Assembly (NCBI GenBank): GCA_977017575.1
Contig: CDRNVI010000039.1
Coordinates: 682,001 to 746,000, forward strand
DNA: 64,000 bases
Direction: 5' to 3'
Source of the DNA: Paramoeba atlantica
Lineage: Eukaryota; Protista; Discosea
The notes beneath the pieces are model-generated. The model was given only the letters and a program-made list of their open reading frames with translations. It was not told the origin of the DNA and made no database searches. Each line of letters starts with the position of its first letter. Position 1 is the first letter of the stretch. This document shows, piece after piece, positions 33,197-58,143 of the stretch. Position numbers and translations under genes: made by a program.

Positions 33197-33544
33197 TTAG
33201 CGGACACCCGCCTTCCTCCACTCTTTTACCGCGGAGGATAGTATCGCGGGGTTGCCTTTTTGAACAGCCACATTAATGGCTTGTAGTGCATGACGCAGGA
33301 AACCTTTCCTGTCATACGTATACCTTGCGATCTCCTTTAGGAGGAGTACGGTGCGCTTCCCTGCCACACCAAAAACGGTAAATGCAAGGGGGTAGAAATG
33401 CATACCCCTTTTCGTGGCCATGTCACTGTGCGCTTTTACTTTCAAGCTTTCCACCCTTTCTAGAGTGTTGCCAGGCGCTACCCATTCGGCCTTAACATAA
33501 GAAGGGGCGAGGGGGACATTCGGGATAATCTTTGGAATGTGTTT
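33197..33544 (-). mobile_element. CRE-clade endonuclease 3' fragment
   Basis: PLAPSYV, K...GMHFYPLAFTVFG..G, AVQKGN; similar to 12619-13257. Confidence 0.8.
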
Positions 33545-34432
33545 GAATTGCGCTTCGAGGAACATATAAAACAGTAGAAAGAACAATAGAAAGCTTTATA
33601 AAATATCACAAATATACTTCCCTCATTTGCACACTACATTCCTCAGATTTTCTCTTGCCATAAATCCTTTCAGAAAATCTGCATACTTGCTGTAAAGTAG
33701 CTAATAAAAACAAGATCACCAATACAACATATCAACCCTGAACTCCACCACCAAGAGATTTCTTGGTGGTTCAAAGGAAGTTTTCTTCCTTACGCGAACG
33801 GGTGTCCACGCGGGGAATGGTTATGGGGGTTGGTGGGTGGGGCAAAAAATTTTAAAACTGGAAATGAAAATGTTTTCTATAGATACACGTATACTCAATT
33901 CCAAACGCTTCAAATTCTTATGAAAGTCATAATAAAGAAATATTATGTGCCCCGCAGGGCCAGTTATCACTCTTATAAACCTCTTGCACAATTCTTTCCG
34001 TAAACTTTTAGAATTGCGCTTCGAGGAACATATAAAACAGTAGAAAGAACAATAGAAAGCTTTATAAAATATCACAAATATACTTCCCTTATTCGCACAC
34101 TACATTCCTCTGATTTTCTCTTGCCATAAATCCTTTCAGAAAATCTGCATGCTTGCTGTAAAGTAACCAATAAAAACAAGATCACCAATAAAACATATCA
34201 ACCCTGAACTCCACTACCAAGAGATTTCTCTCTTCCTTACGCGAACGTGTGTCCACGCGGGGACCGCAAAAAATTTTAAAACTGGAAATGAAAATGTTTC
34301 CTATAGATACACCTATACTCAATTCCAAACGCTTCAAATTCTTATGAAAGTCATAATAAAGAAATATTATGTGCCCCGCAGGGCCAGTTATCACTCTTAT
34401 AAACCTCTTGCACAATTCTTTCCGTAACCTTT
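33545..34432 (-). mobile_element. Non-autonomous mini YR element consisting only of split direct repeats A1-B1-A2-linker-B2
   Basis: 466-bp-period duplication. Shares the G-rich linker, the B|A junction (CGTAAACTTTTA|GAATT) and AAATATTATGTGCCCCG.AGGGCCA with the TATE-like element. Confidence 0.8.
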
Positions 34433-34904
34433 TTTTTTTGGTGTTTTTTTATCCACCCTCAAAAGATAGGGTGGTTTTTTTTTGTCAAGGGGCACCTTAT
34501 TTGCATTACCTAAGGTGCAGGGGTATAGCGCACCCCACCTCCCTAGCTGTAACCTAACTCCTCTCCAAGCGGAGGTCAGCCGTAGCTTGTTATGGCTGGC
34601 TCTCCGGATACGTCGAAAGACGTATTCGGACTGCCCGTTTGGGGAGTTGAGGGGCCATAACGTTTCGGAGTCAAAAGGCCCAATACATCATCATCATCAT
34701 CATGAATCCTTTCCAGAAAACAAGAGGGGGGCGCAGAAAGTGGTTTTGGTCCAGCAGGGTTAAAGGAGGCCACAGACGTGAGCGGGAAGTATGGCGTCAC
34801 GCACGTGACGCTCACTTCTTGTCTCTCCACCGGAGCTCGATCCTTCGCCTTGACGTGGCGCTCCGGCTTACCACCCTTTTGGGTGAACCAAGAAGGGATC
34901 AGTC

Positions 34905-38969: not shown

Positions 38970-40452
38970 TTGAACGTAGGGCCAAATGATACGATTACTC
39001 TAGGAAATTACGGCATTGTACCAAGGGTTGACTCATATCGATATCTAGGCCACATGAAACACTCGCATAAGAATCGAGCCACTTTACAAGACCGTATACA
39101 ATTAGCTTGGAGAGCATTTCATCGCTTAAAGCCGCTCTGGAGGGAACATTTAAGTGTAACGCTCCGCCTGAGAATATTTAATGCTCTTGTAACATCAGTT
39201 TTGTCGTACGGTTTAGCCTCTTTGGTTCCGACAGGTGTAGAATTAAAGATACTTGACACAGAAGTCAATAAGATGCGCAGAATAGCGACAGGGACGCCGT
39301 TGTGGGATGGTTATAAGCAAATACCAACATGTGCGCTGTATAGGGGAGAACCGAAAGTTTCAACGCTCCTGAGAGTCAACCGCGCTAAACTAGTTGGACA
39401 CCTTTTGCGGCATGATTCCCCTTTTGCGAATGTTGCATTATGGAACATAAGGGAAGAGGCACGCATACGCTCATTGTCTGAAGCTTGTGCCCAGGATCTA
39501 GCAATAGATCCAATAGAAATGCACGAACGGGCACTTGATCGATGTTCTTGGCGTAATCTTATTCAGAATTTGTACCAACGACTAGAACCTATCGCCTATT
39601 ATAATCCTTTTGATTCAACTAAAAGAATAGCAGAAGTTGCAAAGATTTTGCAATCGAATCAAAACTCTCTGGAAAAATGGCACGCATTGCAGTTTCAAGA
39701 GGAGAGTGAGACACTTTGGCCCCATAACAACTTGCTTCATATATATTGTGATGGTTCAGTGAGAAAGCTTTCGAACAATATATTCGCAGGGGCATGTGCT
39801 GTAGCCTTCGAAGGAAACGAGATTCTAGCGACTAACGACAAAACGTTGGACTCTATTAACGCAACACCAATACGGGCAGAGCTTTCAGCTTTCTTATTGG
39901 CATTATCAACTGGTCAAGAGAAGAACGTATCTTTCATAGTACACGTAGACTCCGAGCATACATGGAATTTCTGGCACAATTACCGTCGCGCATATCAATT
40001 GGGTCATTATGATGGACTTGAGAATGCCGATTTGTTGATTCAAATAAACAGTCTAGCACAGGAAATAAACAAGAAACATGAAATTCTAGTTGTCAAAGTC
40101 AGAGCACATTGTGGTAATTCAAGGAATGAACATGTGGACCAAATTGCAAAGGAAAGTGCAACATCTGAGTCTATAAGCGTCGCGGAGCCCTATATGAATA
40201 TATGGAGTATCATTCTGGCACAGCAGCACAAAACATCGATGGCTCCGTCAATTTCGTCTGAACGGCAGCATCCAACAAACATATCGCCTGTGAATATTGC
40301 GTGTAAACATCCGTGTAAAGATAAAAGAACGTGTGGTCATAAGTGTTGCAAACGACATTTGTGAATAGCATTGAAAGGTTATTAATTTAGTGACATAATC
40401 AAGGACTCTTAGCCACTTATAACACAGTGGTGTATTATTATTATTATTATTT
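38970..40452 (+). mobile_element. 5'-truncated RTE-like non-LTR element with RNase H and terminal Cys cluster (ORF 38970-40364), (TAT)n tail
   Basis: YRYLG, RIQLAWRAF..L..LW, LVGHLLRH, R..WR; RNase H IYCDGS...RAELSA...VDS...NADL...VRAH.G..RNE.VD.IAK; CKHPCKDKRTCGHKCCK. Confidence 0.88.
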
Positions 40453-40745: not shown

Positions 40746-41687
40746 ATGCTTAAAAAAGTCTCCTTGAAAAGGGTCCGGGACGAGCTTCAACAAGCAAACA
40801 AAAACTCTTACAGAATAGAGCAACTTACAGACGCGGCTGTGAAAGCTTCCACGGCTCGGGAACGAACTAGGGACTGGCGCATCCTGATGCATCTGCTTAG
40901 CATAGAACACGTATCTGAAATCACAATGTCTAGGTTTATTGATGTACTGGCAATTATTGCTGAGCACTATAGTCCCTCTAGACTTGAAAAGATGAGATCG
41001 GCCCTTGTTCACCGACAAACTCTGGATTTGCCGGAGTCCGAAAGGTGGACTCAGGATAGTAAATTCAGAATTGCGTTCCGAGGGCTCATCAGTGAATGCG
41101 AGCGACGCGTGAAATGCATCACAAAGAGCAAGTATAATACCAACTCAGAAGAAGCAGGAACACAAGGCCCGATTTTTGGTCAGAAATTGCAGGAGTTACT
41201 TCTCACATGCGTGGAACAAAGAAGGGGAATCTAGGCGGGAGCAGTGAAACTGGGTTTCGAAGGCCTTCTCAGGAGTTCAGAGATCAGGACGCTTCGAAAG
41301 GAACATCTGATAAGAACGGAGAACGGACGGTGGTACGTTCGAGCCGTTGGAGGGAAAGGGAGAAGGGAAGATGAGATAAAAGTGTATTTGCGAGATACAG
41401 ACGCCAAGATCGAGAGAATGTGGATGATCTTAAAGAAGGGATGTCCAGATGAGTTAATCTTTCCAAACTGGAGCGCCAGGGAAGCGAACAACATAATAAA
41501 TGACGCTGCCATCGAATACAAATGGGATCCAAAAAGAATTTGGTCCATGCATTCACTGAGGCATGGTAAGGCGACTGACCTAAAGTTGAGGGGTGTTGAA
41601 CCCGGAGAAAGGAAATCCTTGGGACGATGGCGAAGCGCAACTGCCGAACAACATTACAGCCGACACCCCAATCAACATAACCAATAA
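40746..41687 (+). pseudogene. Tyrosine recombinase of the VIPER-like element, with one in-frame TAG at 41232-41234
   Basis: GFEGLLRSSEI, GGK, HSLRHG, LGRW.S...HY catalytic R-K-H-R-W-Y set; both ORF-track pieces are in the same frame. Confidence 0.9.
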
Positions 41688-42743
41688 GAGGGCCGAACAT
41701 GCCATAACATTAGTAAAAGTAATTTAAGGAAATGTTCTCGCCGATACCTCTAGTGATATGTGATATCTCTAGTGTATGTGAGTAAGTAGTATCTACACGT
41801 ATGAGAGGTCCCAAATTCTACAAAAAAGTTAGAAGTTGATGGTACAACTGATATGATAGAATAGTAGTCTCCCACATTACAGTATTCCTTCATGTGTAGT
41901 ATGACAGGCGACATGGAGTACGTAGAGCAACGGCGAGGTGACCATTTAAACACATCGACAGGCTTATACCACCGTACTTTAGAGGAATTCGATATACGAA
42001 TCGGCACATCACACACCGAATTGCCGCTCGATCCGATAAGTGTTGCTGGTTGTGTTCTCCTTGGACGACTGAGAGTATGGTCGAGCTCGATGAATATACA
42101 CTGGCTCACAGAAGCCACAGACATACTTTCACGAGATGAGGTCTTCAATTCCGTGCTCCAACCGGAAGCAAGAAAGTGCCATTTTGATAAGACGTTCGCC
42201 TTGTCTACACTAGATATTAGTCAAATTAAGAAATGTGGAACTCTGCGCGATATCGATAGAGAAATCAACGTCTTCTCTCCCCTGCATCATAATGAAAGTA
42301 AACCATGTTAAAACCAATTTTCCTAGTAATATATCGCTTCAATGAAAGTTTCAGTCCAATCATCCCGACTATTTTTAGTTTCCAATAAACTATATCTATC
42401 TGACGAATTATCAAGGTACCTGGCCAATATAATAAAAACAATCACAGAAACCCAGTCAACAACTCCTCAAACTTACGAACGGGCATCCCGTCCACCAACT
42501 CCGCGAACCAACCCGTTCGCCCGTAATCCAAACTCCCGCGCGCACGTGTTTGTAGCAAATGGTGGCGGCCAATTACTAAAAACTCGTAACGTTTTTCAAG
42601 AATTCCTACCGCGTAATAAAATTGAATAGTATATATTTTCTATATAGCTAATTTTTTTTTTTTTTTGATTCTATATAATGAGTTTTACTAATTAATGGTA
42701 CATTCATACCTATGCGAGTTTCCATACATGTATGTATACATGC

Positions 42744-45650
42744 TTATCCGGTGCGGCTGATAGGGTCCGCTGGGTTTTCGGCAGATCTCACATAACGTGC
42801 CATGATACATACGCCAAGGTTCTGATTTGTCTTCAACACACGCTTGAGCTCTCCGGCAATACTGTCGGATTTCGCGATCTTGCGGTTGAATGCTGCTTGG
42901 CAAGAGGTGTTGTCAATAAACAAATCAACACAGGTTCCTTTTTGAAAGTGGTGTGTCAGTTTTTCAAACGCAAGTCGAACGGCCATCGCCTCAGCGTGAC
43001 TCACTTCGTATTTGAACTCAGGTTGCCATTTATCGCCAACAATAATCACTTGTCCGTCGTCCCGGTAAAGAACCGCGCCCCATCCTTTAGCCGACGCATC
43101 CGTGTACAGTCGGTGTTTATGCGGGACAACGTCAGGATGCGGAGGTGGTGATATAGGCTCATTTACCAAAATGATATCACGCCAATTCGCGAGAATCGAT
43201 CGGGTGGCTGTCGGAAGAGGAACCGGTTGATGTGCGAGTTCGGGGCATCGGTTTAACTCATTGACACGTCGTCTAACAATCTTTAAGGGGAAATGATAGT
43301 CTGGTATAATATGACCCAAGACCGCTGCTGCATAGAGGAGGCGCCCCACCGCCGTCTCCAATTGAGAGTACGTAATATTACGAAACCGATCTCGTGACAT
43401 TTTCCGTATAACCCTAGGCCCCAGGTTGACCTTATGGGTTACGTGATTGTAGAAGACGCCGTTAAAAACATATTCAGTGGAGGGGTCAAAACCAGCCTCC
43501 TTGAACAAACCTCCCACTTCCTTACACCGTGAATCCACGAATTTCACAAATTTATCAGCTTGTTCTTGAGATCCTGCGAAACGAATCCCGTCTATATAGA
43601 CGTCCACAGATCCAATGCATGAAACTAGTTCGGGTTTGCATACCGCCAGATCGCCTGCTAGTGTAGCTGTAATCTTGTGCATAATTTCAGGGGCGCATCG
43701 GTGCCCCATTGGCATAACCTTCATCTGGTGTAAGACGCCATTTAGATCTCGAAAGCGAAATTTGGCACGAGCCTGGCGCGGAATTGGAACTTGATAAAAT
43801 CCACATCGGAGATCGCGCTTCACCCCCACTTCTTCGGCAGCCTTATGGAGATAACGAGAAGGATGCAACAAAGGCACGTCTGGCTTGTAGTCTTTTAATC
43901 GCAAGTTATCATCCTTGGTCCATGATATGAAACGGCGCCTATCGTTGCCTTCCTCGTCGGATTCGACTACCGTGAATGGAATTACGTATTGCAGCGTTGG
44001 GTACCGGCGTATGTCGTCCTCCTCCACTCTTTCTATCACTCCGGCTTCAAGTAAACCCGTGATGTCGGCATTTACAAGATTACCTTTTGTTGAAGGCTCT
44101 GGTTGGGCTCCTAGTCGTGTATTAAATAATTCACCTATTACCGTTTCAAGCCGGCGGCGCGCTTCAGGGGTCATCCAATTCTTTACTTTTTGTACATCCA
44201 TAACGGGTATTCCAACTTTAACGTGTAGGGGAAGGTCCATATCTTCGGTACGTGCAAGACGGGATGTACGGCGCGCGCAAATAATGCTGTATCGTCGAAC
44301 GTGCGGTATTTGATCAAAACAAAGATTTACATCCTCTTGAGTCATTGTATTGGGAGGAGAACCGAGGCTCGCTGAGTACCGAGGGCTTTCGCCGTCGTAA
44401 TAAGGTTGCCGTTGTATCGCAAGAGGGAGTTTATGCATTGATGCTTTGCTATGTTTTGAACGTCGGAGAGAGCGACGTGTCCGAGCGCCACCTCGCTGAA
44501 AAGGTGAGTTATCGCGCCGCGCTTCAGGGAATGTGTTCCAAATCCCGGACCTAGAATCCTCTGCATCTTTCGGTCCATCTCCCGAACCGTTGTACTCGCT
44601 ATGTGTTGGCCTTCCCTCATGAATTGGACGTAATTTGCAATCTCCTGAGTTCCTTCCCCTTGGATCGCTGTGCACATCGATAGCCGGTACGGGTTGAGAC
44701 GCGTCGATTTTGTATTCCTCCCCCAATAAATTATTACTTCGTTTGGTTGATGTCGCACAAATCGTTCCAGAGTCAGTTCGGCCACCTCTGTCCATCTGGC
44801 CGCAGCCTTCCAACAAATCAAGGCGGCTATCCCTTCTCTTAACGACAATTTTTCCCTGAGCCGGCGCAGCTGCCATGGAGTAATCGGTTCCATCTGACGA
44901 GTAGGCTCGAGAGCCCCCCTTGCTTGTAGGGCTTTCGCGAACATTTTGAGTGAAATTGGATCCTTTTGGCTTAGTTGAAACACCGTCTGGAGATTTCGGG
45001 TGTAGCTTAACAGTGTTGCTGGTGCGAGATCGAGTTGATTTAAGAAAAGGACGGCGTGTACTGGATCTCGCGGAAAACCGCTTTGTAGACAAAACTTTTC
45101 CAGTCTTTCCCAAAGTCGCGCCCTCGTTAGCCATGTAGCATTTGTCCACATTGGATTGATTGCGCTTTGAATCTGACGTGCGATAGGACTCAGAGGCGGT
45201 AGATTTAGAATTGTATATGTTAGTTTTTGCTGGACTGAGCGCAATTTTGTTTCCCTGGTGTTGTCTCCCGCGGGTCGTATTTCTTGAGGTTTTTTGGCTT
45301 GCGGTTGTAGGCGTTGGCGCTTGGCTTGAGGGATATTTGACTTTGTCATTAATTCCGCCACCGGATTCCGTGGCGAATGCAGTACCGTTCCGTGACATGC
45401 CGTGAAGGCACGCACCTTCCCTGCAGAGTGCAGTGATGAATTGCAGAATATACCTGGATAAATCACCCGCCGCTTCTTCAGCGGACAGGCACGAGCGATA
45501 TAAGGGGTGGGGAACCTGGCCTATTGGCTCCTCTTTGCACCTGTTGTGCCGCTCGTCACCCCGCCCCGAAAACCCGGGGTCGAACGAGTAGAAGATTGAT
45601 TTAATGGGCAGTTGGCGCGAAAGTGACCTGGCTTGTGGCATCGATAGCAA
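42744..45650 (-). CDS. RT/RNase H ORF of TATE-like copy 1 (N-terminal half overlaps YR and gag in other frames)
   Basis: LLEAGVIE, KRDLRCGFYQ, MPMG, YIDG, LYTDAS..GWG, HAEAMAV, IDNTS, NPADPISR. Confidence 0.93.
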   Translation of the reverse strand: MLSMPQARSLSRQLPIKSIFYSFDPGFSGRGDERHNRCKEEPIGQVPHPLYRSCLSAEEAAGDLSRYILQFITALCREGACLHGMSRNGTAFATESGGGINDKVKYPSSQAPTPTTASQKTSRNTTRGRQHQGNKIALSPAKTNIYNSKSTASESYRTSDSKRNQSNVDKCYMANEGATLGKTGKVLSTKRFSARSSTRRPFLKSTRSRTSNTVKLHPKSPDGVSTKPKGSNFTQNVRESPTSKGGSRAYSSDGTDYSMAAAPAQGKIVVKRRDSRLDLLEGCGQMDRGGRTDSGTICATSTKRSNNLLGEEYKIDASQPVPAIDVHSDPRGRNSGDCKLRPIHEGRPTHSEYNGSGDGPKDAEDSRSGIWNTFPEARRDNSPFQRGGARTRRSLRRSKHSKASMHKLPLAIQRQPYYDGESPRYSASLGSPPNTMTQEDVNLCFDQIPHVRRYSIICARRTSRLARTEDMDLPLHVKVGIPVMDVQKVKNWMTPEARRRLETVIGELFNTRLGAQPEPSTKGNLVNADITGLLEAGVIERVEEDDIRRYPTLQYVIPFTVVESDEEGNDRRRFISWTKDDNLRLKDYKPDVPLLHPSRYLHKAAEEVGVKRDLRCGFYQVPIPRQARAKFRFRDLNGVLHQMKVMPMGHRCAPEIMHKITATLAGDLAVCKPELVSCIGSVDVYIDGIRFAGSQEQADKFVKFVDSRCKEVGGLFKEAGFDPSTEYVFNGVFYNHVTHKVNLGPRVIRKMSRDRFRNITYSQLETAVGRLLYAAAVLGHIIPDYHFPLKIVRRRVNELNRCPELAHQPVPLPTATRSILANWRDIILVNEPISPPPHPDVVPHKHRLYTDASAKGWGAVLYRDDGQVIIVGDKWQPEFKYEVSHAEAMAVRLAFEKLTHHFQKGTCVDLFIDNTSCQAAFNRKIAKSDSIAGELKRVLKTNQNLGVCIMARYVRSAENPADPISRTG
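44342..45466 (-). CDS. Tyrosine recombinase of TATE-like copy 1
   Basis: CWKAAARWTEV, TK, HSLKRGA, AKHQ...LLRY. Confidence 0.9.
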   Translation of the reverse strand: MIYPGIFCNSSLHSAGKVRAFTACHGTVLHSPRNPVAELMTKSNIPQAKRQRLQPQAKKPQEIRPAGDNTRETKLRSVQQKLTYTILNLPPLSPIARQIQSAINPMWTNATWLTRARLWERLEKFCLQSGFPRDPVHAVLFLNQLDLAPATLLSYTRNLQTVFQLSQKDPISLKMFAKALQARGALEPTRQMEPITPWQLRRLREKLSLREGIAALICWKAAARWTEVAELTLERFVRHQPNEVIIYWGRNTKSTRLNPYRLSMCTAIQGEGTQEIANYVQFMREGQHIASTTVREMDRKMQRILGPGFGTHSLKRGAITHLFSEVALGHVALSDVQNIAKHQCINSLLRYNGNLITTAKALGTQRASVLLPIQ

Positions 45651-46561
45651 AGAAAGGCCGGGCGATTAGTGGCGATTTTTGAAACACTCATGTGGCGCAG
45701 CTTTTCCTCCGCAACTGCCTTCGAGTACGCATCCTTAGTGTCATCATCCTTGTGGAGTTTTAATTGTACACGTTCGACTTGAATTCCGGATGAGGCCCAA
45801 TAGTGGTTTCGCAGTTCTTCGATGGCTGTGCGTACGATTTCGAGAAAATGTTCCTCTCGCCATAGGGGAAAAACTCGTGCCGCTTGGATCCACTCTTGGA
45901 CTATTTTAAATAGACGTTCACGGATAGGAGGAGCGTTCAGTAACAAACCAAATTCAGGATGGACGCGTAAATCACGGATAAGGTCTCGTACGCGTAACTC
46001 ATCCTCGGATTCTAGCCACGGGCCCCATGTTAGAGGATCGTTTGCGGTGAAACGAGCCGGATCGGTGATAGGCGCATTAGGAGTCTTAGGTTCTTCGTCC
46101 GCTTTGCGCCCTCCAGGCATTTTTGCTCGCACCCGGGTAATTTCCAACGAATAATATTCGATGTCTGGAAAAGGAAAGTCGTATGCCATGCCGGGATCAT
46201 CGTTCCAAACGGCTTCCATGCCTCCTGAATCGTCGGATTTCAGACGAACGTTGCCAATCACAGTTTCGCGCACTGCATCCCCATGGTGACCCCACACGGC
46301 TTCTACAGACACATCGTAACCCTTAAGGATCAAAGTCCGGACTTTTTGCGCGAATTCCGCCTTATCCTCGTCAGACATCGCTGCAGAGCCTGTTCCCCCC
46401 CGAAGCAAAGCCGCCACTTGCTCCGGGTTCAGCGTCGTACGTTGTCCCCCGTATTGCAGACTCGGATCGACAGGGTTGGGAGATGCCGGATCTTCTCGTA
46501 TAGGACTCTGTGGCCTCCCCATCGACAGCGTGCGACGAACAGTATTAAGAATGCTGGTCAT
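45521..46561 (-). CDS. Gag-like protein of TATE-like copy 1
   Basis: C-terminal CCHC knuckle CYRCHKPGHFRANC. Confidence 0.88.
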   Translation of the reverse strand: MTSILNTVRRTLSMGRPQSPIREDPASPNPVDPSLQYGGQRTTLNPEQVAALLRGGTGSAAMSDEDKAEFAQKVRTLILKGYDVSVEAVWGHHGDAVRETVIGNVRLKSDDSGGMEAVWNDDPGMAYDFPFPDIEYYSLEITRVRAKMPGGRKADEEPKTPNAPITDPARFTANDPLTWGPWLESEDELRVRDLIRDLRVHPEFGLLLNAPPIRERLFKIVQEWIQAARVFPLWREEHFLEIVRTAIEELRNHYWASSGIQVERVQLKLHKDDDTKDAYSKAVAEEKLRHMSVSKIATNRPAFLCYRCHKPGHFRANCPLNQSSTRSTPGFRGGVTSGTTGAKRSQ

Positions 46562-46596
46562 AACGCAATTTGAAAAGGGTAAAAGAAGGAGTGTCG

Positions 46597-46637
46597 CAAC
46601 AAGGTACAGAAACTGTATCTTTATCGTTAATCTTTAT
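46597..46637 (-). other. Near-complete spliced-leader exon copy at the gag trans-splice acceptor
   Basis: ATAAAGAT-TAACGATAAAGATACAGTTTCTGTACCTTGTTG|CGACAC; the sister copy has ...GTGTATAG|CGACAC at the same point. Confidence 0.9.
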
Positions 46638-47215
46638 CGCAATTTGAAAAGGGTAAAAGAAGGAGTGTCGCTATACACAAAAACAATATATATTACTTCA
46701 TCCCGAGTACTACTAAATTATAAATTTCATTACATCTAACAACGGGTGCCCCTTTCGGGGCCACAATCTGTAAAAACAAATCATAATATAAATATTATGT
46801 GCCCCGAAGGGCCATTATGTCAATCATCCTAAATTTCTAAACGTATACTTCTAAAAAGCGTAACTAGTTGGGCGAGAGCCTTCAAAACACTGAAAAATAG
46901 AACTGTTGCTCGGCTCATTATTAATGCCAAGGAAGCGAGTCGACTTGTTAACGAACCTCCGCACATCGAACTTCCTTCCCCAGAGGACATAAGGAAAGAA
47001 CTTTTATGCCTCTTTGTTATGTGACAGGAGACCTTCGTCATTGGTTTTATCAACTTCCCATTTGCGATAGAAATCCACGCCGAGGGGGCTCCATGAAACA
47101 TATAGGTAACAAACAAATATAAGTAAATACCTATGACTAATATAATCACACTTCCAAATCGTCCCAAAATCAAAGAACACATAATACGATATATAGATAG
47201 AATTCACACGCATAA

Positions 47216-47235
47216 ACAGTTTCTGTACCTTGTTG
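47216..47235 (+). other. Spliced-leader 3' fragment fused to a copy of the retroelement RNase H region (47236-47429 matches about 39720-39920)
   Basis: ACAGTTTCTGTACCTTGTTG|CCCCATAAC. Confidence 0.8.
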
Positions 47236-47743
47236 CCCCATAACAACTTGCTTCATATATATTGTGATGGTTCAGTGAGAAAGCTTTCGAACAGTATATT
47301 CGCAGGGGCATGTGCCTTCGAAGGAAACGAGATTCTAGCGACTAACGACAAAACGTTGGACTCTATTAACGCAACACCAATACGAGCAGAGCTTTCAGCT
47401 TTCTTATTGGCATTATCAACTGGTCAAGAGGACCTCATTGTTCTAGGGAGGTAACATCTCCTCGGAGATATGATGCCTAGGGTACTTTGTTGACTTTATA
47501 TATACCAGATTACTGATATGCTGCAGGGAGGAGAGCAGATGCGAATTTCACGAGGTAATATCAGAAAGCTGGCTATGGAATACACGGGAGTACTCGGACG
47601 GGTTGTGGCCGAGAGTCAGGTTGGCGACACTATCGCTGTTTTATGGTCCTCAGACAAAGTATTTTCAAAGCAAATCATATATACTTAGCCCTCATCTAAA
47701 ATGACATATCCCTCCGCAAGCCAACGTTCGTGTTTTCAAACTG

Positions 47744-50154: not shown

Positions 50155-51170
50155 GGAAAGCTACGGGAAACGTGCCATGAGGACTTGTCTGCGCGAAGCG
50201 TGTCGTTGTCTTATCCGCAGGTTGTGATTTCTGGCCTCGAGCGCCCAAACCTCCTTTCAGCTCGGCTGGGTTTCGTCAACTTCCGGATGAGCAATCTTCG
50301 CGCTCACGGAAAGCTACGGGAAACGTGCCATGAGGACTTGTCTGCGCGAAGCGTGTTGGTGTCTTATCCGCAGGTTGTGATTTCTGGCCTCGAGCGCCCA
50401 AACCTCCTTTCAGCTCGGCTGGGTTTCGTCAACTTCCGGATGAGCAATCTTCGCGCTCACGGAAAGCCACGGGAAACGTGCCATGAGGACTTGTCTGCGC
50501 GAAGCGTGTTGGTTTCTTATCCGCAGGTTGTGATTTCTGGCCTCGAGCGCCCAAACCTCCTTTCAGCTCGGCTGGGTTTCGTCAACTTCCGGATGAGTAA
50601 TCTTCGCGCTCACGGAAATCTACGGGAAACGTGCCATGAGGACTTGTCTGCGCGAAGCGTGTTGGTGTCTTATCCGCAGGTTGTGATTTCTGGCCTCGAG
50701 CGCCCAAACCTCCTTTCAGCTCGGTTGGGTTTCGGCAACTTCCGGATCAGTAATCTTCGCGCTCACGGAAAGCTACGGGAAACGTGCCATGAGGACTTGT
50801 CTGCGCGAAGCGTGTTGGTGTCTTATCCGCAGGTTGTGATTTCTGGCCTCGAGCGCCCAAACCTCCTTTCAGCTCGGCTGGGTTTCGTCAACTTCCGGAT
50901 GAGCAATCTTCGCGCTCACGGAAAGCTACGGGAAACGTGCCATGAGGATTTGTCTGCGCGAAGCGTGTTGGTTTCTTATCCGCAGGTTGTGATTTCTGGC
51001 CTCGAGCGCCCAAACCTCCTTTCAGCTCGGCTTGGTTTCGTCAACTTCCGGATGAGTAATCTTCGCGCTCACGGAAAGCTACGGGAAACGTGCCATGAGG
51101 ACTTGTCTGCGCGAAGCGTGTTGGTGTCTTATCCGCAGGTTGTGATTTCTTGCCTCGAGCGCCCAAACCT
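50155..51170. repeat. 153-bp satellite, about 6.6 copies
   Basis: Unit starts at 50155, 50308, 50461, 50614, 50767, 50920 and 51073; joins the 18-mer array through a shared ACCT. Confidence 0.95.
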
Positions 51171-52655
51171 TTCCTTATTGTAAGACCTTTCCTTATTGTA
51201 AGACCTTTCCTTATTGTAAGACCTTTCCTTATTGTAAGACCTTTCCTTATTGTAAGACCTTTCCTTATTGTAAGACCTTTCCTTATTGTAAGACCTTTCC
51301 TTATTGTAAGACCTTTCCTTATTGTAAGACCTTTCCTTATTGTAAGACCTTTCCTTATTGTAAGACCTTTCCTTATTGTAAGACCTTTCCTTATTGTAAG
51401 ACCTTTCTTTATTGTAAGACCTTTCCTTATTGTAAGACCTTTCCTTATTGTAAGACCTTTCCTTATTGTAAGACCTTTCTTTATTGTAAGACCTTTCCTT
51501 ATTGTAAGACCTTTCCTTATTGTAAGACCTTTCCTTATTGTAAGACCTTTCCTTATTGTAAGACCTTTCCTTATTGTAAGACCTTTCCTTATTGTAAGAC
51601 CTTTCCTTATTGTAAGACCTTTCCTTATTGTAAGACCTTTCCTTATTGTAAGACCTTTCCTTATTGTAAGACCTTTCCTTATTGTAAGACCTTTCCTTAT
51701 TGTAAGACCTTTCCTTATTGTAAGACCTTTCCTTATTGTAAGACCTTTCCTTATTGTAAGACCTTTCCTTATTGTAAGACCTTTCCTTATTGTAAGACCT
51801 TTCCTTATTGTAAGACCTTTCCTTATTGTAAGACCTTTCCTTATTGTAAGACCTTTCCTTATTGTAAGACCTTTCCTTATTGTAAGACCTTTCCTTATTG
51901 TAAGACCTTTCCTTATTGTAAGACCTTTCCTTATTGTCAGACCTTTCCTTATTGTAAGACCTTTCCTTATTGTAAGACCTTTCCTTATTGTAAGACCTTT
52001 CCTTATTGTAAGACCTTTCCTTATTGTAAGACCTTTCCTTATTGTAAGACCTTTCCTTATTGTAAGACCTTTCCTTATTGTAAGACCTTTCCTTATTGTA
52101 AGACCTTTCCTTATTGTAAGACCTTTCCTTATTGTAAGACCTTTCCTTATTGTAAGACCTTTCCTTATTGTAAGACCTTTCCTTAGTGTAAGACCTTTCC
52201 TTAGTGTAAGACCTTTCCTTATTGTAAGACCTTTCCTTAGTGTAAGACCTTTCCTTATTGTAAGACCTTTCCTTATTGTAAGACCTTTCCTTATTGTAAG
52301 ACCTTTCCTTATTGTAAGACCTTTCCTTATTGTAAGACCCTTCCTTATTGTAAGACCTTTCCTTATTGTAAGACCTTTCCTTATTGTAAGACCTTTCCTT
52401 ATTGTAAGACCTTTCCTTATTGTAAGACCTTTCCTTATTGTAAGACCTTTCCTTATTGTAAGACCTTTCCTTATTGTAAGACCTTTCCTTATTGTAAGAC
52501 CTTTCCTTATTGTAAGACCTTTCCTTATTGTAAGACCTTTCCTTATTGTTAGACGTTTCCTTATTGTAAGGCCTTTCCTTATTGTAAGACCTTTCCTTAT
52601 TGTAAGACCTTTCCTTATTGTAAGACCTTTCCTTATTGTAAGACCTTTCCTTATT
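51167..52655. repeat. 18-bp tandem array (CTTTCCTTATTGTAAGAC)n, about 83 units
   Basis: Near-perfect repeat with rare single-base variants. Confidence 0.98.
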
Positions 52656-54106
52656 GAAATCAACGTCTTCTCTCCCCTGCATCATAATGAAAGTAAACCA
52701 TGTTAAAACCAATTTTCCTAGTAATATATCGCTTCAATGAAAGTTTCAGTCCAATCATCCCGACTATTTTTAGTTTCCAATAAACTATATCTATCTGACG
52801 AATTATCAAGGTACCTGGCCAATATAATAAAAACAATCACAGAAACCCAGTCAACAACTCCTGAAACTTACGAACGGGCATCCCGTCCACCAACTCCGCG
52901 AAATGGTTGGGGGTTGGTGGGTGGGCGCAATTTGAAAAGGGTAAAAGAAGGAGTGTCGCTATACACAAAAACAATATATATGACTTCATCCCGAGTACTA
53001 CTAAATAATAAATCTCATTACATCTAACAACGGGTGCCCCTTTCGGGGCCACAATCTGTAAAAACAAATCATAATATAAATATTATGTGCCCCGAAGGGC
53101 CATTATGTCAATCATCCTAAATTTCTAAACGTATACTTCTAGAAATCAACGTCTTCTCTCCCCTGCATCATAATGAAAGTAAACCATGTTAAAACCAATT
53201 TTCCTAGTAATATATCGCTTCAATGAAAGTTTCAGTCCAATCATCCCGACTATTTTTAGTTTCCAATAAACTATATCTATCTGACGAATTATCAAGGTAC
53301 CTGGCCAATATAATAAAAACAATCACAGAAACCCAGTCAACAACTCCTGAAACTTACGAACGGGCATCCCGTCCACCAACTCCGCGAAATGGTTGGGGGT
53401 TGGTGGGTGGGCGCAATTTGAAAAGGGTAAAAGAAGGAGTGTCGCTATACACAAAAACAATATATATGACTTCATCCCGAGTACTACTAAATAATAAATC
53501 TCATTACATCTAACAACGGGTGCCCCTTTCGGGGCCACAATCTGTAAAAACAAATCATAATATAAATATTATGTGCCCCGAAGGGCCATTATGTCAATCA
53601 TCCTAAATTTCTAAACGTATACTTCTAGAAATCAACGTCTTCTCTCCCCTGCATCATAATGAAAGTAAACCATGTTAAAACCAATTTTCCTAGTAATATA
53701 TCGCTTCAATGAAAGTTTCAGTCCAATCATCCCGACTATTTTTAGTTTCCAATAAACTATATCTATCTGACGAATTATCAAGGTACCTGGCCAATATAAT
53801 AAAAACAATCACAGAAACCCAGTCAACAACTCCTCAAACTTACGAACGGGCATCCCGTCCACCAACTCCGCGAACCAACCCGTTCGCCCGTAATCCAAAC
53901 TCCCGCGCGCACGTGTTTGTAGCAAATGGTGGCGGCCAATTACTAAAAACTCGTAACGTTTTTCAAGAATTCCTACCGCGTAATAAAATTGAATAGTATA
54001 TATTTTCTATATAGCTAATTTTTTTTTTTGATTCTATATAATGAGTTTTACTAATTAATGGTACATTCATACCTATGCGAGTTTCCATACATGTATGTAT
54101 ACATGC

Positions 54107-57013
54107 TTATCCGGTGCGGCTGATAGGGTCCGCTGGGTTTTCGGCAGATCTCACGTAACGTGCCATGATACATACGCCAAGGTTCTGATTTGTCTTCAAC
54201 ACACGCTTGAGCTCTCCGGCAATACTGTCGGATTTCGCGATCTTGCGTTTGAATGCTGCTTGACAAGAGGTGTTGTCAATAAACAAATCAACACAGGTTC
54301 CTTTTTGAAAGTGGTGTGTCAGTTTTTCAAACGCAAGTCGAACGGCCATCGCCTCAGCGTGATTCACTTCGTATTTGAACTCAGGTTGCCATTTATCGCC
54401 AACAATAATCACTTGTCCGTCGTCCCGGTAAAGAACCGCGCCCCATCCTTTAGCCGACGCATCCGTGTACAGTCGGTGTTTATGCGGGACAACGTCAGGA
54501 TGCGGAGGTGGTGATATAGGCTCATTTACCAAAATGATATCACGCCAATTCGCGAGAATCGATCGGGTGGCTGTCGGAAGAGGAACCGGTTGATGTGCGA
54601 GTTCGGGGCATCGGTTTAACTCATTGATACGTCGTCTAACAATCTTTAAGGGGAAATGATAGTCTGGTATAATATGACCCAAGACCGCTGCTGCATAGAG
54701 GAGGCGCCCCACCGCCGTCTCCAATTGAGAGTACGTAATATTACGAAACCGATCTCGTGACATTTTCCGTATAACCCTAGGCCCCAGGTTGACCTTATGG
54801 GTTACGTGATTGTAGAAGACGCCGTTAAAAACATATTCAGTGGAGGGGTCAAAACCAGCCTCCTTGAACAAACCTCCCACTTCCTTACACCGTGAATCCA
54901 CGAATTTCACAAATTTATCAGCTTGTTCTTGAGATCCTGCGAAACGAATCCCGTCTATATAGACGTCCACAGATCCAATGCATGAAACTAGTTCGGGTTT
55001 GCATACCGCCAGATCGCCTGCTAGTGTAGCTGTAATCTTGTGCATAATTTCAGGGGCGCATCGGTGCCCCATTGGCATAACCTTCATCTGGTGTAAGACG
55101 CCATTTAGATCTCGAAAGCGAAATTTGGCACGAGCCTGGCGCGGAATTGGAACTTGATAAAATCCACATCGGAGATCGCGCTTCACCCCCACTTCTTCGG
55201 CAGCCTTATGGAGATAACGAGAAGGATGCAACAAAGGCACGTCTGGCTTGTAGTCTTTTAATCGCAAGTTATCATCCTTGGTCCATGATATGAAACGGCG
55301 CCTATCGTTGCCTTCCTCGTCGGATTCGACTACCGTGAATGGAATTACGTATTACAGCGTTGGGTACCGGCGTATGTCGTCCTCCTCCACTCTTTCTATC
55401 ACTCCGGCTTCAAGTAAACCCGTGATGTCGGCATTTACAAGATTACCTTTTGTTGAAGGCTCTGGTTGGGCTCCTAGTCGTGTATTAAATAATTCACCTA
55501 TTACCGTTTCAAGCCGGCGGCGCGCTTCAGGGGTCATCCAATTCTTTACTTTTTGTACATCCATAACGGGTATTCCAACTTTAACGTGTAGGGGAAGGTC
55601 CATATCTTCGGTACGTGCAAGACGGGATGTACGGCGCGCGCAAATAATGCTGTATCGTCGAACGTGCGGTATTTGATCAAAACAAAGATTTACATCCTCT
55701 TGAGTCATTGTATTGGGAGGAGAACCGAGGCTCGCTGAGTACCGAGGGCTTTCGCCGTCGTAATAAGGTTGCCGTTGTATCGCAAGAGGGAGTTTATGCA
55801 TTGATGCTTTGCTATGTTTTGAACGTCGGAGAGAGCGACGTGTCCGAGCGCCACCTCGCTGAAAAGGTGAGTTATCGCGCCGCGCTTCAGGGAATGTGTT
55901 CCAAATCCCGGACCTAGAATCCTCTGCATCTTTCGGTCCATCTCCCGAACCGTTGTACTCGCTATGTGTTGGCCTTCCCTCATGAATTGGACGTAATTTG
56001 CAATCTCCTGAGTTCCTTCCCCTTGGATCGCTGTGCACATCGATAGCCGGTACGGGTTGAGACGCGTCGATTTTGTATTCCTCCCCCAATAAATTATTAC
56101 TTCGTTTGGTTGATGTCGCACAAATCGTTCCAGAGTCAGTTCGGCCACCTCTGTCCATCTGGCCGCAGCCTTCCAACAAATCAAGGCGGCTATCCCTTCT
56201 CTTAACGACAATTTTTCCCTGAGCCGGCGCAGCTGCCATGGAGTAATCGGTTCCATCTGACGAGTAGGCTCGAGAGCCCCCCTTGCTTGTAGGGCTTTCG
56301 CGAACATTTTGAGTGAAATTGGATCCTTTTGGCTTAGTTGAAACACCGTCTGGAGATTTCGGGTGTAGCTTAACAGTGTTGCTGGTGCGAGATCGAGTTG
56401 ATTTAAGAAAAGGACGGCGTGTACTGGATCTCGCGGAAAACCGCTTTGTAGACAAAACTTTTCCAGTCTTTCCCAAAGTCGCGCCCTCGTTAGCCATGTA
56501 GCATTTGTCCACATTGGATTGATTGCGCTTTGAATCTGACGTGCGATAGGACTCAGAGGCGGTAGATTTAGAATTGTATATGTTAGTTTTTGCTGGACTG
56601 AGCGCAATTTTGTTTCCCTGGTGTTGTCTCCCGCGGGACGCATTTCTTGAGGTTTTTTGGCTTGCGGTTGCAGGCGTTGGCGTTTGGCTTGAGGGATATT
56701 TGACTTTGTCTTTAATTCCGCCACCGGATTCCGTGGCGAATGCAGTACCGTTCCGTGACATGCCGTGAAGGCACGCACCTTCCCTGCAGAGTGCAGTGAT
56801 GAATTGCAGAATATACCTGGATAAATCACCCGCCGCTTCTTCAGCGGACAGACACGAGCGATATAAGGGGTGGGGAACCTGGCCTATTGGCTCCTCTTTG
56901 CACCTGTTGTGCCGCTCGTCACCCCGCCCCGAAAACCCGGGGTCGAACGAGTAGAAGATTGATTTAATGGGCAGTTGGCGCGAAAGTGACCTGGCTTGTG
57001 GCATCGATAGCAA
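54107..57013 (-). pseudogene. RT/RNase H ORF of copy 2, split by a CAA-to-TAA stop at 55352-55354
   Basis: Otherwise near-identical to 42744-45650. Confidence 0.9.
55705..56829 (-). CDS. Tyrosine recombinase of copy 2 (intact)
   Basis: 374 aa, two substitutions relative to copy 1. Confidence 0.9.
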   Translation of the reverse strand: MIYPGIFCNSSLHSAGKVRAFTACHGTVLHSPRNPVAELKTKSNIPQAKRQRLQPQAKKPQEMRPAGDNTRETKLRSVQQKLTYTILNLPPLSPIARQIQSAINPMWTNATWLTRARLWERLEKFCLQSGFPRDPVHAVLFLNQLDLAPATLLSYTRNLQTVFQLSQKDPISLKMFAKALQARGALEPTRQMEPITPWQLRRLREKLSLREGIAALICWKAAARWTEVAELTLERFVRHQPNEVIIYWGRNTKSTRLNPYRLSMCTAIQGEGTQEIANYVQFMREGQHIASTTVREMDRKMQRILGPGFGTHSLKRGAITHLFSEVALGHVALSDVQNIAKHQCINSLLRYNGNLITTAKALGTQRASVLLPIQ

Positions 57014-57925
57014 AGAAAGGCCGGGCGATTAGTGGCGATTTTTGAAACACTCATGTGGCGCAGCTTTTCCTCCGCAACTGCCTTCGAGTACGCATCCTTA
57101 GTGTCATCATCCTTGTGGAGTTTTAATTGTACACGTTCGACTTGAATTCCGGATGAGGCCCAATAGTGGTTTCGCAGTTCTTCGATGGCTGTGCGTACGA
57201 TTTCGAGAAAATGTTCCTCTCGCCATAGGGGAAAAACTCGTGCCGCTTGGATCCACTCTTGGACTATTTTAAATAGACGTTCACGGATAGGAGGAGCGTT
57301 CAGTAACAAACCAAATTCAGGATGGACGCGTAAATCACGGATAAGGTCTCGTACGCGTAACTCATCCTCGGATTCTAGCCACGGGCCCCATGATAGAGGA
57401 TCGTTTGCGGTGAAACGAGCCGGATCGGTGATAGGCGCATTAGGAGTCTTAGGTTCTTCGTCCGCTTTGCGCCCTCCAGGCATTTTTGCTCGCACCCGGG
57501 TAATTTCCAACGAATAATATTCGATGTCTGGAAAAGGAAAGTCGTATGCCATGCCGGGATCATCGTTCCAAACGGCTTCCATGCCTCCTGAATCGTCGGA
57601 TTTCAGACGAACGTTGCCAATCACAGTTTCGCGCACTGCATCCCCATGGTGACCCCACACGGCTTCTACAGACACATCGTAACCCTTAAGGATCAAAGTC
57701 CGGACTTTTTGCGCGAATTCCACCTTATCCTCGTCAGACATCGCTGCAGAGCCTGTTCCCCCCCCGAAGCAAAGCCGCCACTTGCTCCGGGTTCAGCGTC
57801 GTACGTTGTCCCCCGTATTGCAGACTCGGATCGACAGGGTTGGGAGATGCCGGATCTTCTCGTATAGGACTCTGTGGCCTCCCCATCGACAGCGTGCGAC
57901 GAACAGTATTAAGAATGCTGGTCAT
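56884..57925 (-). pseudogene. Gag of copy 2, with a 1-bp frameshift in a G/C homopolymer near 57760 (possibly a sequencing error)
   Basis: Two ORF-track pieces together match 45521-46561. Confidence 0.8.
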
Positions 57926-58143
57926 CACGCAATTTGAAAAGGGTAAAAGAAGGAGTGTCGCTATACACAAAAACAATATATATTACTTCATCCCGAGTAC
58001 TACTAAAAAATAAATCTCATTACATCTAACAACGGGTGCCCCTTTCGGGGCCACAATCTGTAAAAACAAATCATAATATAAATATTATGTGCCCCGAAGG
58101 GCCATTATGTCAATCATCCTAAATTTCTAAACGTATACTTCTA

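What the first reader, a model, noticed from the sequence alone, without database searches (positions are those of the whole stretch)
46564..46853. Spliced leader fossilised inside a YR retrotransposon suggests how it rebuilds a 5' end lost to trans-splicing
Seen: copy 2 reads ...TTTTTGTGTATAG|CGACACTCC...AAATTGCG-gag, with the AG at 57961-57962. Copy 1 has an extra 74 bp here: a complete 216-bp A module ending AAATTGCG, then 41 nt ending in TAACGATAAAGATACAGTTTCTGTACCTTGTTG, then a second copy of the 33 bp that follow the AG. The SL-like 3' end joins exactly at the acceptor, and the A|SL junction is the same base at which the internal A2 and A3 modules end. Established: kinetoplastid SL exons share AACG near the 5' end, ACAGTTTCTGTAC and a terminal TTG (T. 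brucei AACTAACGCTATTATTAGAACAGTTTCTGTACTATATTG); trans-splicing removes everything 5' of the AG; Ngaro/VIPER/TATE-type elements use split direct repeats. Inference: the replication template is the SL-capped mRNA, and the 33 nt shared by the mRNA 5' UTR and the end of A2 is the strand-transfer homology that normally replaces the SL with module A. In copy 1 the RT read through the SL, stuttered (CGATAAAGAT is duplicated) and jumped end-to-end through a CG microhomology. I do not know of a description of this coupling between trans-splicing and YR-element replication.
Basis: partly seen in the sequence, partly recalled or inferred. Interest (0 to 1): 0.92.

Follow-up and report, generated by a model that had tools for sequence, protein, structure and literature searches.

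The report
Spliced-leader fossil in recombinase retrotransposon
One young copy of a VIPER-like jumping gene carries, written into its DNA, the cell's own spliced leader joined exactly at a splice acceptor; this shows the element copied itself from a trans-spliced RNA and marks where its replication intermediate ends.

Summary
On the minus strand, copy 1 reads: complete 216-bp repeat A (ends AAATTGCG), ATAAAGAT, spliced leader (SL) nt 5/6-38, a second copy of the 33 nt that follow the AG inside A, then TT-ATG of gag. The genome's real SL RNA genes lie in 5S-linked tandem arrays. Their exon is AACTTTAACGATAAAGATACAGTTTCTGTACCTTGTTG, followed by a GTATGAGAAGC intron. The fossil matches exon nt 5-38 exactly and stops at the exon end.

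The element has gag (CCHC), a Cre-fold tyrosine recombinase, RT/RNase H and split direct repeats, and makes no target duplication. This is the VIPER/TATE layout.

This SL junction is unique in the genome for this family: 1 SL junction against 6 clean ones. The same architecture, complete A then SL then post-AG segment, recurs in two other families. One of these is shown to be a related VIPER-like family; the other is unclassified. The SL 3' 20-mer occurs 743 times genome-wide.

Trans-spliced RNA as the reverse-transcription template is well supported. The rebuilding of A from the internal A2 through the 33-nt redundancy is plausible but inferred. The A end behaves as a fixed replication terminus, and a conserved C-rich linker follows it. 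No RNA or long-read check was possible.

This scan had already noted the same kind of junction on other DNA of this genome. I found no published description.

The parts
46638..46853 (-). Repeat A (A1) of copy 1, 216 bp. It starts TAGAAGTATACG and ends CAAATTGCG. It contains a T-rich tract plus the AG acceptor at 46672-46671 and the first copy of the 33-nt post-acceptor segment (46670-46638).
   Evidence: It is 98.6-99% identical to A1, A2 and A3 of copy 2 and to about 20 other A modules in the genome.
46631..46637 (-). Filler ATAAAGA(T). With the CG that ends A it reads CGATAAAGAT, which equals SL nt 9-18. This is a stutter of the SL 5' part. CG is the microhomology at the A|SL joint.
   Evidence: Similar SL-proximal stutters occur in L007, L010, L025, L008 and L024.
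46597..46630 (-). SL fossil, an exact copy of nt 5-38 of the 38-nt SL exon (nt 5 is ambiguous with the stutter). It ends at the exon's last base TTG. No intron follows it and no SL promoter precedes it.
   Evidence: The SL gene exon is AACTTTAACGATAAAGATACAGTTTCTGTACCTTGTTG followed by GTATGAGAAGC.
46564..46596 (-). Second copy of the 33 nt that follow the AG (CGACACTCC...CAAATTGCG). This is the 5' UTR of the trans-spliced gag mRNA.
   Evidence: The SL-to-33-nt joint CTGTACCTTGTTGCGACACTCC occurs once in the 45.7-Mb genome.
45521..46561 (-). ORF1, gag-like, 346 aa, with a CCHC knuckle CYRCHKPGHFRANC. It is open in copy 1.
   Evidence: zf-CCHC scores 19.8 bits, just under the cut-off, and the motif is visible in the sequence.
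44342..45466 (-). ORF2, tyrosine recombinase, 374 aa. Candidate active-site residues are R224, K253, H-S-L-K-R316, H342 and LLRY.
   Evidence: AlphaFold2 model with pLDDT 72. The Foldseek top 40 hits are all Cre, Xer or integrase chains, best E 6.6e-7. Pfam gives no hit.
42744..44402 (-). ORF3, RT plus RNase H. The mechanical ORF runs to 45650 and the true start is not determined.
   Evidence: RT_RNaseH scores 28-29 bits, above its cut-off. RVT_1 scores 21-23 bits, below its cut-off.
42261..42507 (-). Repeat B of copy 1, ending GTTGATTTC. Copy 1 stops here. It has no A2, no linker, no B2, no poly(A) and no target duplication.
52656..58143 (-). Copy 2, without an SL. Its layout is A1 57928-58143 (AG at 57962-57961), gag/YR/RT, B1 53628-53874, A2 53412-53627, linker 53389-53411, B2 53142-53388, A3 52926-53141, linker 52903-52925, B3 52656-52902. 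It is inserted in an 18-bp satellite with no target duplication.

Best explanation
Copy 1 is a young, precisely integrated copy of a VIPER-like tyrosine-recombinase retrotransposon. Its cDNA was made on an element RNA that had been trans-spliced at the AG inside repeat A. That RNA therefore began with the capped SL followed by only the last 33 nt of A.

Shown: the SL copy is exact. It stops at the exon end. It is joined at the AG. It is flanked by two copies of the 33 nt. Its upstream neighbour is a complete A that ends at the very base where internal A2 copies end.

Inferred: the 183 nt of A lost to trans-splicing, which hold the polypyrimidine tract and the acceptor itself, are normally restored from an internal A. 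The 33 nt act as terminal redundancy, like R-U5 of an LTR element. The SL is normally discarded.

In copy 1 the reverse transcriptase copied the SL down to about nt 5, near the cap. It slipped once, re-copying nt 18-9. The product was then joined end to end, through a CG microhomology, to a molecule that ends at the A end. This is comparable to a 2-LTR-circle junction or to an RT template jump. The resulting circle was opened by the recombinase at the B|A junction (GATTTC|TAGAAG) and inserted without target duplication.

The A end is thus a fixed terminus of the replication intermediate. The conserved C-rich linker that follows internal A copies is a candidate priming site.
For: The SL identity rests on real SL RNA genes with a GTATGAGAAGC intron in 2.56-kb arrays with 5S rRNA. 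The fossil equals nt 5-38 of the exon.

The acceptor logic holds in three families. Family 1 reads tttttgtgtatAG|CGACAC. Family 2 reads attagacAG|ACTTTTC. Family 3 reads attactcAG|GTTTACT.

The design of complete A, then 0-12 nt of filler, then SL, then the repeated post-AG segment recurs. It is seen in family 2 (C1 tandem units). It is seen in family 3 with two different fillers (C9, and C42/C77). In family 3 an internal A2 (L020) ends at the same base...AAAAGTTTC, and is followed by a C-rich linker.

The element type rests on gag, a Cre-fold YR and RT/RH, and on split direct repeats with clean ends and no duplication in three copies.

SL-bearing junctions are a minority: 1 of 7 in family 1. 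In family 3, 3 SL junctions behind a complete A stand beside 11 clean A-to-gag junctions.

SL-proximal stutters and a snap-back occur in other fossils.

Reverse transcription of SL-capped RNA is pervasive here. The SL 20-mer has 743 genomic matches, only about 56 of which continue with GT, a set that includes the SL RNA gene arrays, and many lie behind A-runs.

The linker CCC(A/G/T)CCCACCA(A/G)CCCCCAA(A)CCA follows internal A in at least 4 families.
Against: There is no RNA evidence for this family. The one possibly-RNA run held SL-headed contigs of other genes only.

No read bridges the junction.

Copies that contain the linker are numerous, so the linker is copied during normal replication. 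That does not fit a simple model in which minus-strand synthesis always starts at the A2 end.

The linker/B hairpin of family 1 (z -3.4) is not conserved in family 3.

In kinetoplastids polyadenylation is coupled to the next downstream trans-splicing. A2's own acceptor should therefore often cut the RNA before A2. An RNA that carries both the SL and A2 would then be a minority species.

Copy 1 and another copy (L076) are solo A-int-B units without A2. How the full split-repeat form is regenerated is not explained.
Confidence: 0.68

Rival explanations
1. This is a by-product only. The normal replication template is an unspliced read-through transcript that already contains a full A. Copy 1 and its analogues would arise when the RT occasionally uses or switches to the abundant mature SL-capped mRNA. 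In that case the fossil says nothing about how the 5' end is normally rebuilt.
For: Only 1 of 7 family-1 junctions carries the SL, and in family 3 3 SL junctions stand beside 11 clean A-to-gag junctions. This genome's RTs copy SL-capped RNAs of many kinds, including unspliced SL RNA itself (L033) and an mRNA retrocopy of family 3 behind an A-run (L039). Tandem arrays A-int-B-A-int-B exist, and read-through transcripts of these would contain a full A.
Against: The upstream partner is the exact A end in family 1 (this copy) and in both independent family-3 events; in family 2 the duplicated segment ends at the corresponding point, but no internal A was available to confirm it is the A end. An occasional switch should land anywhere. 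A frequency of 15-20% is high for an accident. Any transcript that crosses A is exposed to trans-splicing at this AG.
Confidence: 0.22
2. This is an assembly artefact. The 74 bp would be a chimera introduced by mis-assembly or by cDNA-derived reads.
For: No unitig shown bridges 46588-46637 in four runs of one study. The joint is unique in the genome.
Against: A cDNA read cannot supply a complete A upstream of the SL. The same design is present at C1 (4 tandem units), C9, C42 and C77 in other families. Both flanks continue at 99.5% identity with copy 2. Unitigs of k=31 must break here because the SL and the 33 nt are multi-copy.
Confidence: 0.03
3. This is a retrocopy of the element's mRNA, made by a LINE, that happened to land beside a solo A. 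Alternatively it is DNA-level capture from an SL RNA gene, as with SLACS/CZAR/CRE-type association.
For: LINE-type SL-headed copies behind A-runs are common. Family 3 has one such mRNA retrocopy (L039).
Against: Copy 1 ends at the exact B end with no poly(A), starts at the exact A start, and has no target duplication. The SL copy lacks the intron and promoter and stops at the exon end, so it derives from RNA. A landing exactly at the A end by chance is very unlikely, and it is repeated in other families.
Confidence: 0.03

Closest known systems
VIPER / TATE tyrosine-recombinase retrotransposons of kinetoplastids (with SIRE), DIRS order
   Same: The ORF order is gag-like, YR, RT/RH. The split direct repeats are A1 ... 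B1-A2-B2. There is no target duplication. A short A-linker-B unit corresponds to SIRE, which is A2 plus about 30 bp plus B2 (PMC6681497, PMC12278014). From memory, not checked here: T. cruzi SIRE was reported to supply a trans-splice acceptor to neighbouring genes (Vazquez et al. 1994).
   Different: No paper I could search links the repeat's acceptor, the SL, or trans-splicing to the replication of these elements. Here a DNA fossil places the RNA 5' end 33 nt before the A end. Clade membership (VIPER or TATE) was not tested by phylogeny. Protein identity to anything named was not obtained.
Ngaro/PAT/DIRS split-repeat replication model (Goodwin and Poulter; from memory)
   Same: The RNA lacks the outer part of A1. 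An internal B1-A2 supplies the missing sequence. A circle is made and is inserted by the recombinase.
   Different: In that model the 5' end is set by transcription initiation. Here it is set by trans-splicing, and the fossil gives the first sequence-level marks of the ends: the AG and the A end.
LTR-element R/U5 redundancy, and 2-LTR-circle junctions of retroviruses
   Same: A short terminal redundancy (33 nt) lies between the RNA 5' end and a fixed terminus. The aberrant product looks like an end-to-end joint of a linear cDNA. A conserved sequence sits just 3' of the terminus, where a primer-binding site would lie.
   Different: There is no tRNA-type TGG... site. The linker is C-rich and its partner is unknown. 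Integration is by a tyrosine recombinase at B|A and not by an integrase at the ends.
Spliced-leader relics in dinoflagellate retrogenes
   Same: DNA copies of the SL at the 5' ends of retro-copied genes prove an mRNA intermediate (PMC5585692, PMC12014239).
   Different: Those are cellular retrogenes. Here the relic lies inside a retrotransposon's own terminal repeat structure, in a euglenozoan, and bears on the element's replication mechanism.
SLACS/CZAR/CRE site-specific LINEs in SL RNA genes
   Same: A retroelement sits next to SL sequence.
   Different: Those elements interrupt SL genes at the DNA level, so both gene halves flank them (PMC12278014). Here the SL copy is exon-only, is joined at a splice acceptor, and lies inside the element.

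Membership tests
Tyrosine-recombinase retrotransposon (DIRS order; VIPER/TATE-like) | Encodes a tyrosine recombinase | tested here: met
   The ORF2 model matches Cre, Xer and integrases (top 40 hits, best E 6.6e-7). R, K, HxxxR, H and Y are in the expected order. Pfam misses it.
Tyrosine-recombinase retrotransposon (DIRS order; VIPER/TATE-like) | Encodes RT and RNase H | tested here: met
   RT_RNaseH scores 28-29 bits, above its cut-off. RVT_1 scores 21-23 bits, below its cut-off of 29.6.
Tyrosine-recombinase retrotransposon (DIRS order; VIPER/TATE-like) | Split direct repeats A1 ... B1-A2-B2 | tested here: met
   Copy 2 is A-int-B-A-linker-B-A-linker-B. Copy 1 and L076 are solo A-int-B forms.
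Tyrosine-recombinase retrotransposon (DIRS order; VIPER/TATE-like) | No target-site duplication | tested here: met
   Three copies have different flanks and no repeat.
VIPER clade or TATE clade specifically | Phylogenetic placement of RT or YR with named VIPER or TATE sequences | not tested
   No named relatives were returned and no reference sequences were at hand.
Kinetoplastid-type SL RNA / SL trans-splicing | SL RNA gene consisting of a short exon plus a GT intron, in tandem arrays | tested here: met
   There is a 38-nt exon followed by a GTATGAGAAGC intron. The arrays have a 2.56-kb unit with 5S rRNA on C97, C107, C74 and C11.
Kinetoplastid-type SL RNA / SL trans-splicing | The SL is found on the element's transcripts at this AG | tested here: inconclusive
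   Only Logan contigs were available. The one possibly-RNA run shows SL-headed contigs of other genes and none of this element.
SLACS/CZAR/CRE-type insertion into SL genes | The element interrupts an SL RNA gene, with promoter and intron halves flanking it | tested here: not met
   The fossil has no promoter and no intron, and the joint is at the exon end and an AG.
SL-relic retrocopy (as in dinoflagellates) | A DNA-encoded SL at the 5' end of a sequence copied from mRNA | tested here: met

The most novel reading that the evidence does not exclude
VIPER-like elements would replicate in an LTR-like way, with the roles of transcription start and primer site re-assigned. The trans-splice acceptor in A would define the start of a 23-34-nt R/U5-like redundancy. 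The A end would be the first base copied, that is the 5' end of minus-strand DNA. The conserved C-rich linker behind internal A would be the primer-binding site for an unknown G-rich primer. Solo A-int-B copies, canonical A-int-B-A-linker-B copies and A-SL-a copies would then be the integrated counterparts of 1-repeat circles, 2-repeat circles and end-joined read-through products. This would give the first mechanistic map of YR-retrotransposon reverse transcription and would explain what SIRE-like A-linker-B units are.
Probability: 0.2. Interest if true: 0.85.

Novelty: new variant of a known kind. Interest (0 to 1): 0.7.

Why it matters
How DIRS, Ngaro and VIPER elements reverse-transcribe and rebuild their ends has only ever been modelled from repeat geometry. 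Here natural failed products preserve two coordinates of the intermediate. One is the RNA 5' end, which is the SL at an AG inside A. The other is a fixed DNA or RNA terminus at the A end.

The fossils also show a simple logic for a mobile element in an organism without gene-specific promoters. The terminal repeat carries the splice acceptor in place of a promoter. The internal repeat copy would restore what trans-splicing removes.

Both points are directly testable with 5' RACE, direct-RNA sequencing and circle sequencing in a culturable protist. They can also be looked for in T. cruzi VIPER/SIRE.

Tried and rejected
1. Read support. One read-laying run on 45000-47300 with four runs returned only k-mer unitigs that break at the SL and at the 33-nt repeat. 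It neither confirmed nor contradicted the junction. The possibly-RNA run had no contig of this element.

2. More genomic copies. I could not fetch the 3' ends of other family-1 copies, the other SL-bearing family-3 copies, or an internal A of family 2. I used junction-specific pattern counts instead and did not try to read flanks out by other means.

3. Self-priming hairpin. The linker pairs with the start of B in family 1 (z -3.4). The pairing is absent in family 3 and is not compensated in the L073 family. I rejected it as a conserved structure.

4. tRNA-type primer site. The sequence after the A end starts CCC, not TGG. I rejected this by inspection.

5. Pfam for ORF2 gave nothing. BLASTP against the neighbouring integrase fragment gave nothing. 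A PDB profile search was only marginal, E 0.78. The fold search settled the question.

6. The homologue search returned six unnamed metagenomic proteins, so there was no organism or clade name.

7. Literature. The exact SL and its 3' part are in no held paper. The VIPER PNAS paper (PMC15765) is not held. The SIRE acceptor statement therefore rests on memory.

8. Family 2 (the C1 tandem array) showed no protein similarity to family-1 gag, YR or RT at E 1e-4, so its class is not established.

Full report
**What is there**

Read on the minus strand, copy 1 of the element has a complete 216-bp repeat A (46853-46638). Inside A, a T-rich tract is followed by the first AG (46672-46671), and then by 33 nt, CGACACTCC...CAAATTGCG, that close the repeat. 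Directly behind the final CG come ATAAAGA (46637-46631) and then TTAACGATAAAGATACAGTTTCTGTACCTTGTTG (46630-46597). A second copy of the same 33 nt follows (46596-46564), then TT and the ATG of gag (46561).

Copy 2 (A1 at 57928-58143, AG at 57961-57962) goes straight from A to the ATG. It is otherwise 99.5% identical over 4.3 kb.

**Is it the spliced leader?**

The 20-mer ACAGTTTCTGTACCTTGTTG has 743 matches in the 45.7-Mb assembly. Extending the pattern by GT picked out tandem arrays on C97, C107, C74 and C11. Each 2.56-kb unit of these arrays holds a 5S rRNA gene and a gene that reads AACTTTAACGATAAAGATACAGTTTCTGTACCTTGTTG|GTATGAGAAGCTTCG... behind a conserved upstream region. This is a kinetoplastid-type SL RNA gene with a 38-nt exon.

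The fossil in copy 1 equals exon nt 5-38 without mismatch. It stops at the exon's last base, has no intron behind it and no promoter before it. It was therefore copied from spliced RNA and not from an SL gene.

The bases ATAAAGAT, together with the CG that ends A, repeat SL nt 9-18. Such slips near the SL are common here. Examples are L007, L010, L025, L008 and L024, plus a snap-back inverted copy in L029.

**What the element is**

ORF1 is gag-like with a CCHC knuckle. ORF2 gets no Pfam hit. An AlphaFold2 model built on seven homologues (pLDDT 72) matches Cre, Xer and phage integrases in all of the top 40 Foldseek hits, best E 6.6e-7. The R, K, HxxxR, H and Y residues lie in the expected order. 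ORF3 has RT and RNase H.

Copy 2 has the layout A-int-B-A-linker-B-A-linker-B and lies in an 18-bp satellite. Copy 1 and a copy on C2 (L076) are solo A-int-B units. All three start TAGAAG and end GATTTC, and none has a target duplication.

This is the VIPER/TATE design: gag, YR, RT/RH, split direct repeats A1...B1A2B2, and no duplication. SIRE corresponds to A2 plus about 30 bp plus B2 (PMC6681497, PMC12278014). I did not test which clade it belongs to.

**How often, and is it systematic?**

In this family the SL-to-33-nt joint occurs once in the genome. Six other A1-gag junctions are clean.

The same design recurs in other families.

- Family 3 has a gag about 30% identical to this one. On C9 it reads ...attactcAG|GTTTACTGTTCTCGACAAAAGTT(TC)|TTTAACG...TTG|GTTTACTGTTCTCGACAAAAGTT|CTCGACAAAATG.
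- On C42 and C77, family 3 shows the same joint with a 12-nt filler, TTTTGTCTCTAT.
- An internal A of family 3 (L020) ends at the same ...AAAAGTTTC and is followed by a C-rich linker.
- Family 3 has 13 post-acceptor-to-gag junctions and 4 SL joints. Three of the SL joints sit behind a complete A, and one sits behind an A-run, which is an mRNA retrocopy.
- Family 2 is a 5093-bp tandem unit on C1. It reads ...attagacAG|X34|TG|SL nt 2-38|X34. Its class is not established.

In three families the SL is joined after an AG. In family 1 and in both independent family-3 events the upstream partner is a complete A ending at the base where internal A copies end. In family 2 the upstream copy of the 34-nt post-AG segment ends at the same point as the downstream copy, but no internal A was available, so the A end is not confirmed there. 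If the upstream joint fell at random within a 216-bp repeat, even one such hit within 2 nt would have a chance of about 1.4%.

**Reading**

The robust conclusion is that these elements are reverse transcribed from RNA that was trans-spliced at the AG inside A. Such an RNA has lost the first 183 nt of A, including its own polypyrimidine tract and acceptor.

The second conclusion is that the A end is a fixed terminus of some replication intermediate. The SL-bearing copies are end-to-end joints of that terminus with the copied 5' end of the RNA. This is comparable to a 2-LTR-circle junction or to an RT template jump.

That A is normally restored from an internal A2, using the 23-34 nt between the AG and the A end as redundancy, is the natural inference. 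It fits the classical split-repeat model, but nothing here shows it.

The AG-to-A-end distance is 33, 30, 25 and 34 nt in the four families I could read.

A C-rich motif, CCC(A/G/T)CCCACCA(A/G)CCCCCAA(A)CCA, follows internal A in at least four families. That is the position where a primer-binding site would lie if the A end were the first base copied. Three things count against that reading. The motif is not tRNA-like. Its pairing with B is not conserved. Linker-containing copies are themselves multiplied, which a simple start-at-A2 model does not explain.

A further difficulty comes from established kinetoplastid biology: polyadenylation is coupled to the next acceptor. The RNA should therefore often be cut before A2.

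**Rivals**

The main rival is that unspliced read-through RNA is the normal template and that the SL-bearing copies are accidents. The exact A-end joint and the 15-20% frequency argue against it, but only RNA and cDNA data can decide.

An assembly artefact is unlikely because the design recurs at other loci. However, the one read-laying run could not bridge the repeats.

LINE-mediated retrocopy and SL-gene capture are excluded by the precise ends, the missing poly(A), and the exon-only copy.

**Known or new**

SL relics that mark retrogenes are known in dinoflagellates (PMC5585692, PMC12014239). SL-gene-specific LINEs are known in trypanosomatids. The split repeats of VIPER/TATE have been described. 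I found no paper that links trans-splicing or the SL to the replication of YR elements, and no paper that contains this SL sequence.

Within this scan, the same kind of A-SL-a junction had already been noted on other DNA of this genome (s1-381664, s1-369850, s1-381643, s1-369998). I re-derived two such families independently.

I rate it a new variant of a known kind. It is real, recurrent and mechanistically informative, and the mechanism is still inferred.

Noticed in passing
window 47216-47235 (+), continuing to about 47430: The last 20 nt of the SL (ACAGTTTCTGTACCTTGTTG) are fused to a 5'-truncated copy of an RNase H-bearing element. The full version of that element is at 38970-40364, and 39719-39920 is 96% identical. 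In the full copy the joint is preceded by TTTGG, not AG. This looks like an RT template switch onto SL sequence, or non-canonical splicing, and not normal trans-splicing.
   Followed up: partly
window 10985-11004 (-): Another 20-nt SL 3' end is followed by a T-rich segment and a long GC hairpin (ccggcaacgggcat...atgcccgttgccgg). L022 has a related copy. It is probably a short SL-headed non-coding retroposon.
   Followed up: no
genome-wide (G000); loci L001-L030: The SL 3' 20-mer has 743 matches, and only about 56 of these continue with GT, a set that includes the SL RNA gene arrays. In a 30-locus sample about a third sit directly behind long A-runs and head LINE-like 5' UTRs (AATTATTTTC...). 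These are head-to-tail or A-run insertions of SL-capped retroelement RNAs.
   Followed up: partly
L033 (G000:C6:27088-27121, -): This is a retrocopy of the unspliced SL RNA itself. It holds exon nt 3-38 plus the intron GTATGAGAAGC...GGGGCTT, ends in an A-run, and lacks the gene's upstream region.
   Followed up: no
L029 (G000:C2:553085-553104, +): The SL is preceded by an inverted partial SL, which is a snap-back. It is joined to AAATTTAGGATGATTGA, the sequence that follows a second AG at nt 16-17 of an A-like repeat. Repeat A therefore offers at least two acceptors.
   Followed up: partly
window 52903-52925 and 53389-53411 (-); L020:509-535; L009; L073/L074: A C-rich 23-25-nt linker lies right after internal A repeats and is conserved across at least four diverged YR families. 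It is followed by a conserved GGACGGG..CCCGTTC hairpin at the start of B. It is a candidate cis signal, possibly a priming site. Its pairing partner is unknown.
   Followed up: partly
window 51167-52656 and 58138-60253: Long arrays of an 18-bp satellite (AATAAGGAAAGGTCTTAC on the element's strand) flank copy 2 on both sides. The element sits exactly between two units.
   Followed up: no
window 33542-34433: A tandem dimer of a coding-free A'-spacer-B' mini element of another family (222-bp and 168-bp repeats, 96-98% identical). It is the SIRE-like form.
   Followed up: no
L048/L049 (G000:C12:~621158 and C2:~430445): These are deletion derivatives of this family. The gag 3' end is joined to the last 6 nt of A2 (ATTGCG), then linker, then B, giving a gag-only non-autonomous form. 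They are present in two near-identical segments on C2 and C12.
   Followed up: no
window 41244-41687 (+): A fragment of a different tyrosine recombinase (Pfam Phage_integrase, E 3e-11) lies on the opposite strand just beyond the 3' end of copy 1. The region is a nest of YR elements.
   Followed up: no
window 56884-57927 and 54107-57013 (-): Copy 2, which lacks the SL, has a frameshift near gag codon 55 and an interrupted RT ORF. All three ORFs of the SL-bearing copy 1 are open.
   Followed up: partly
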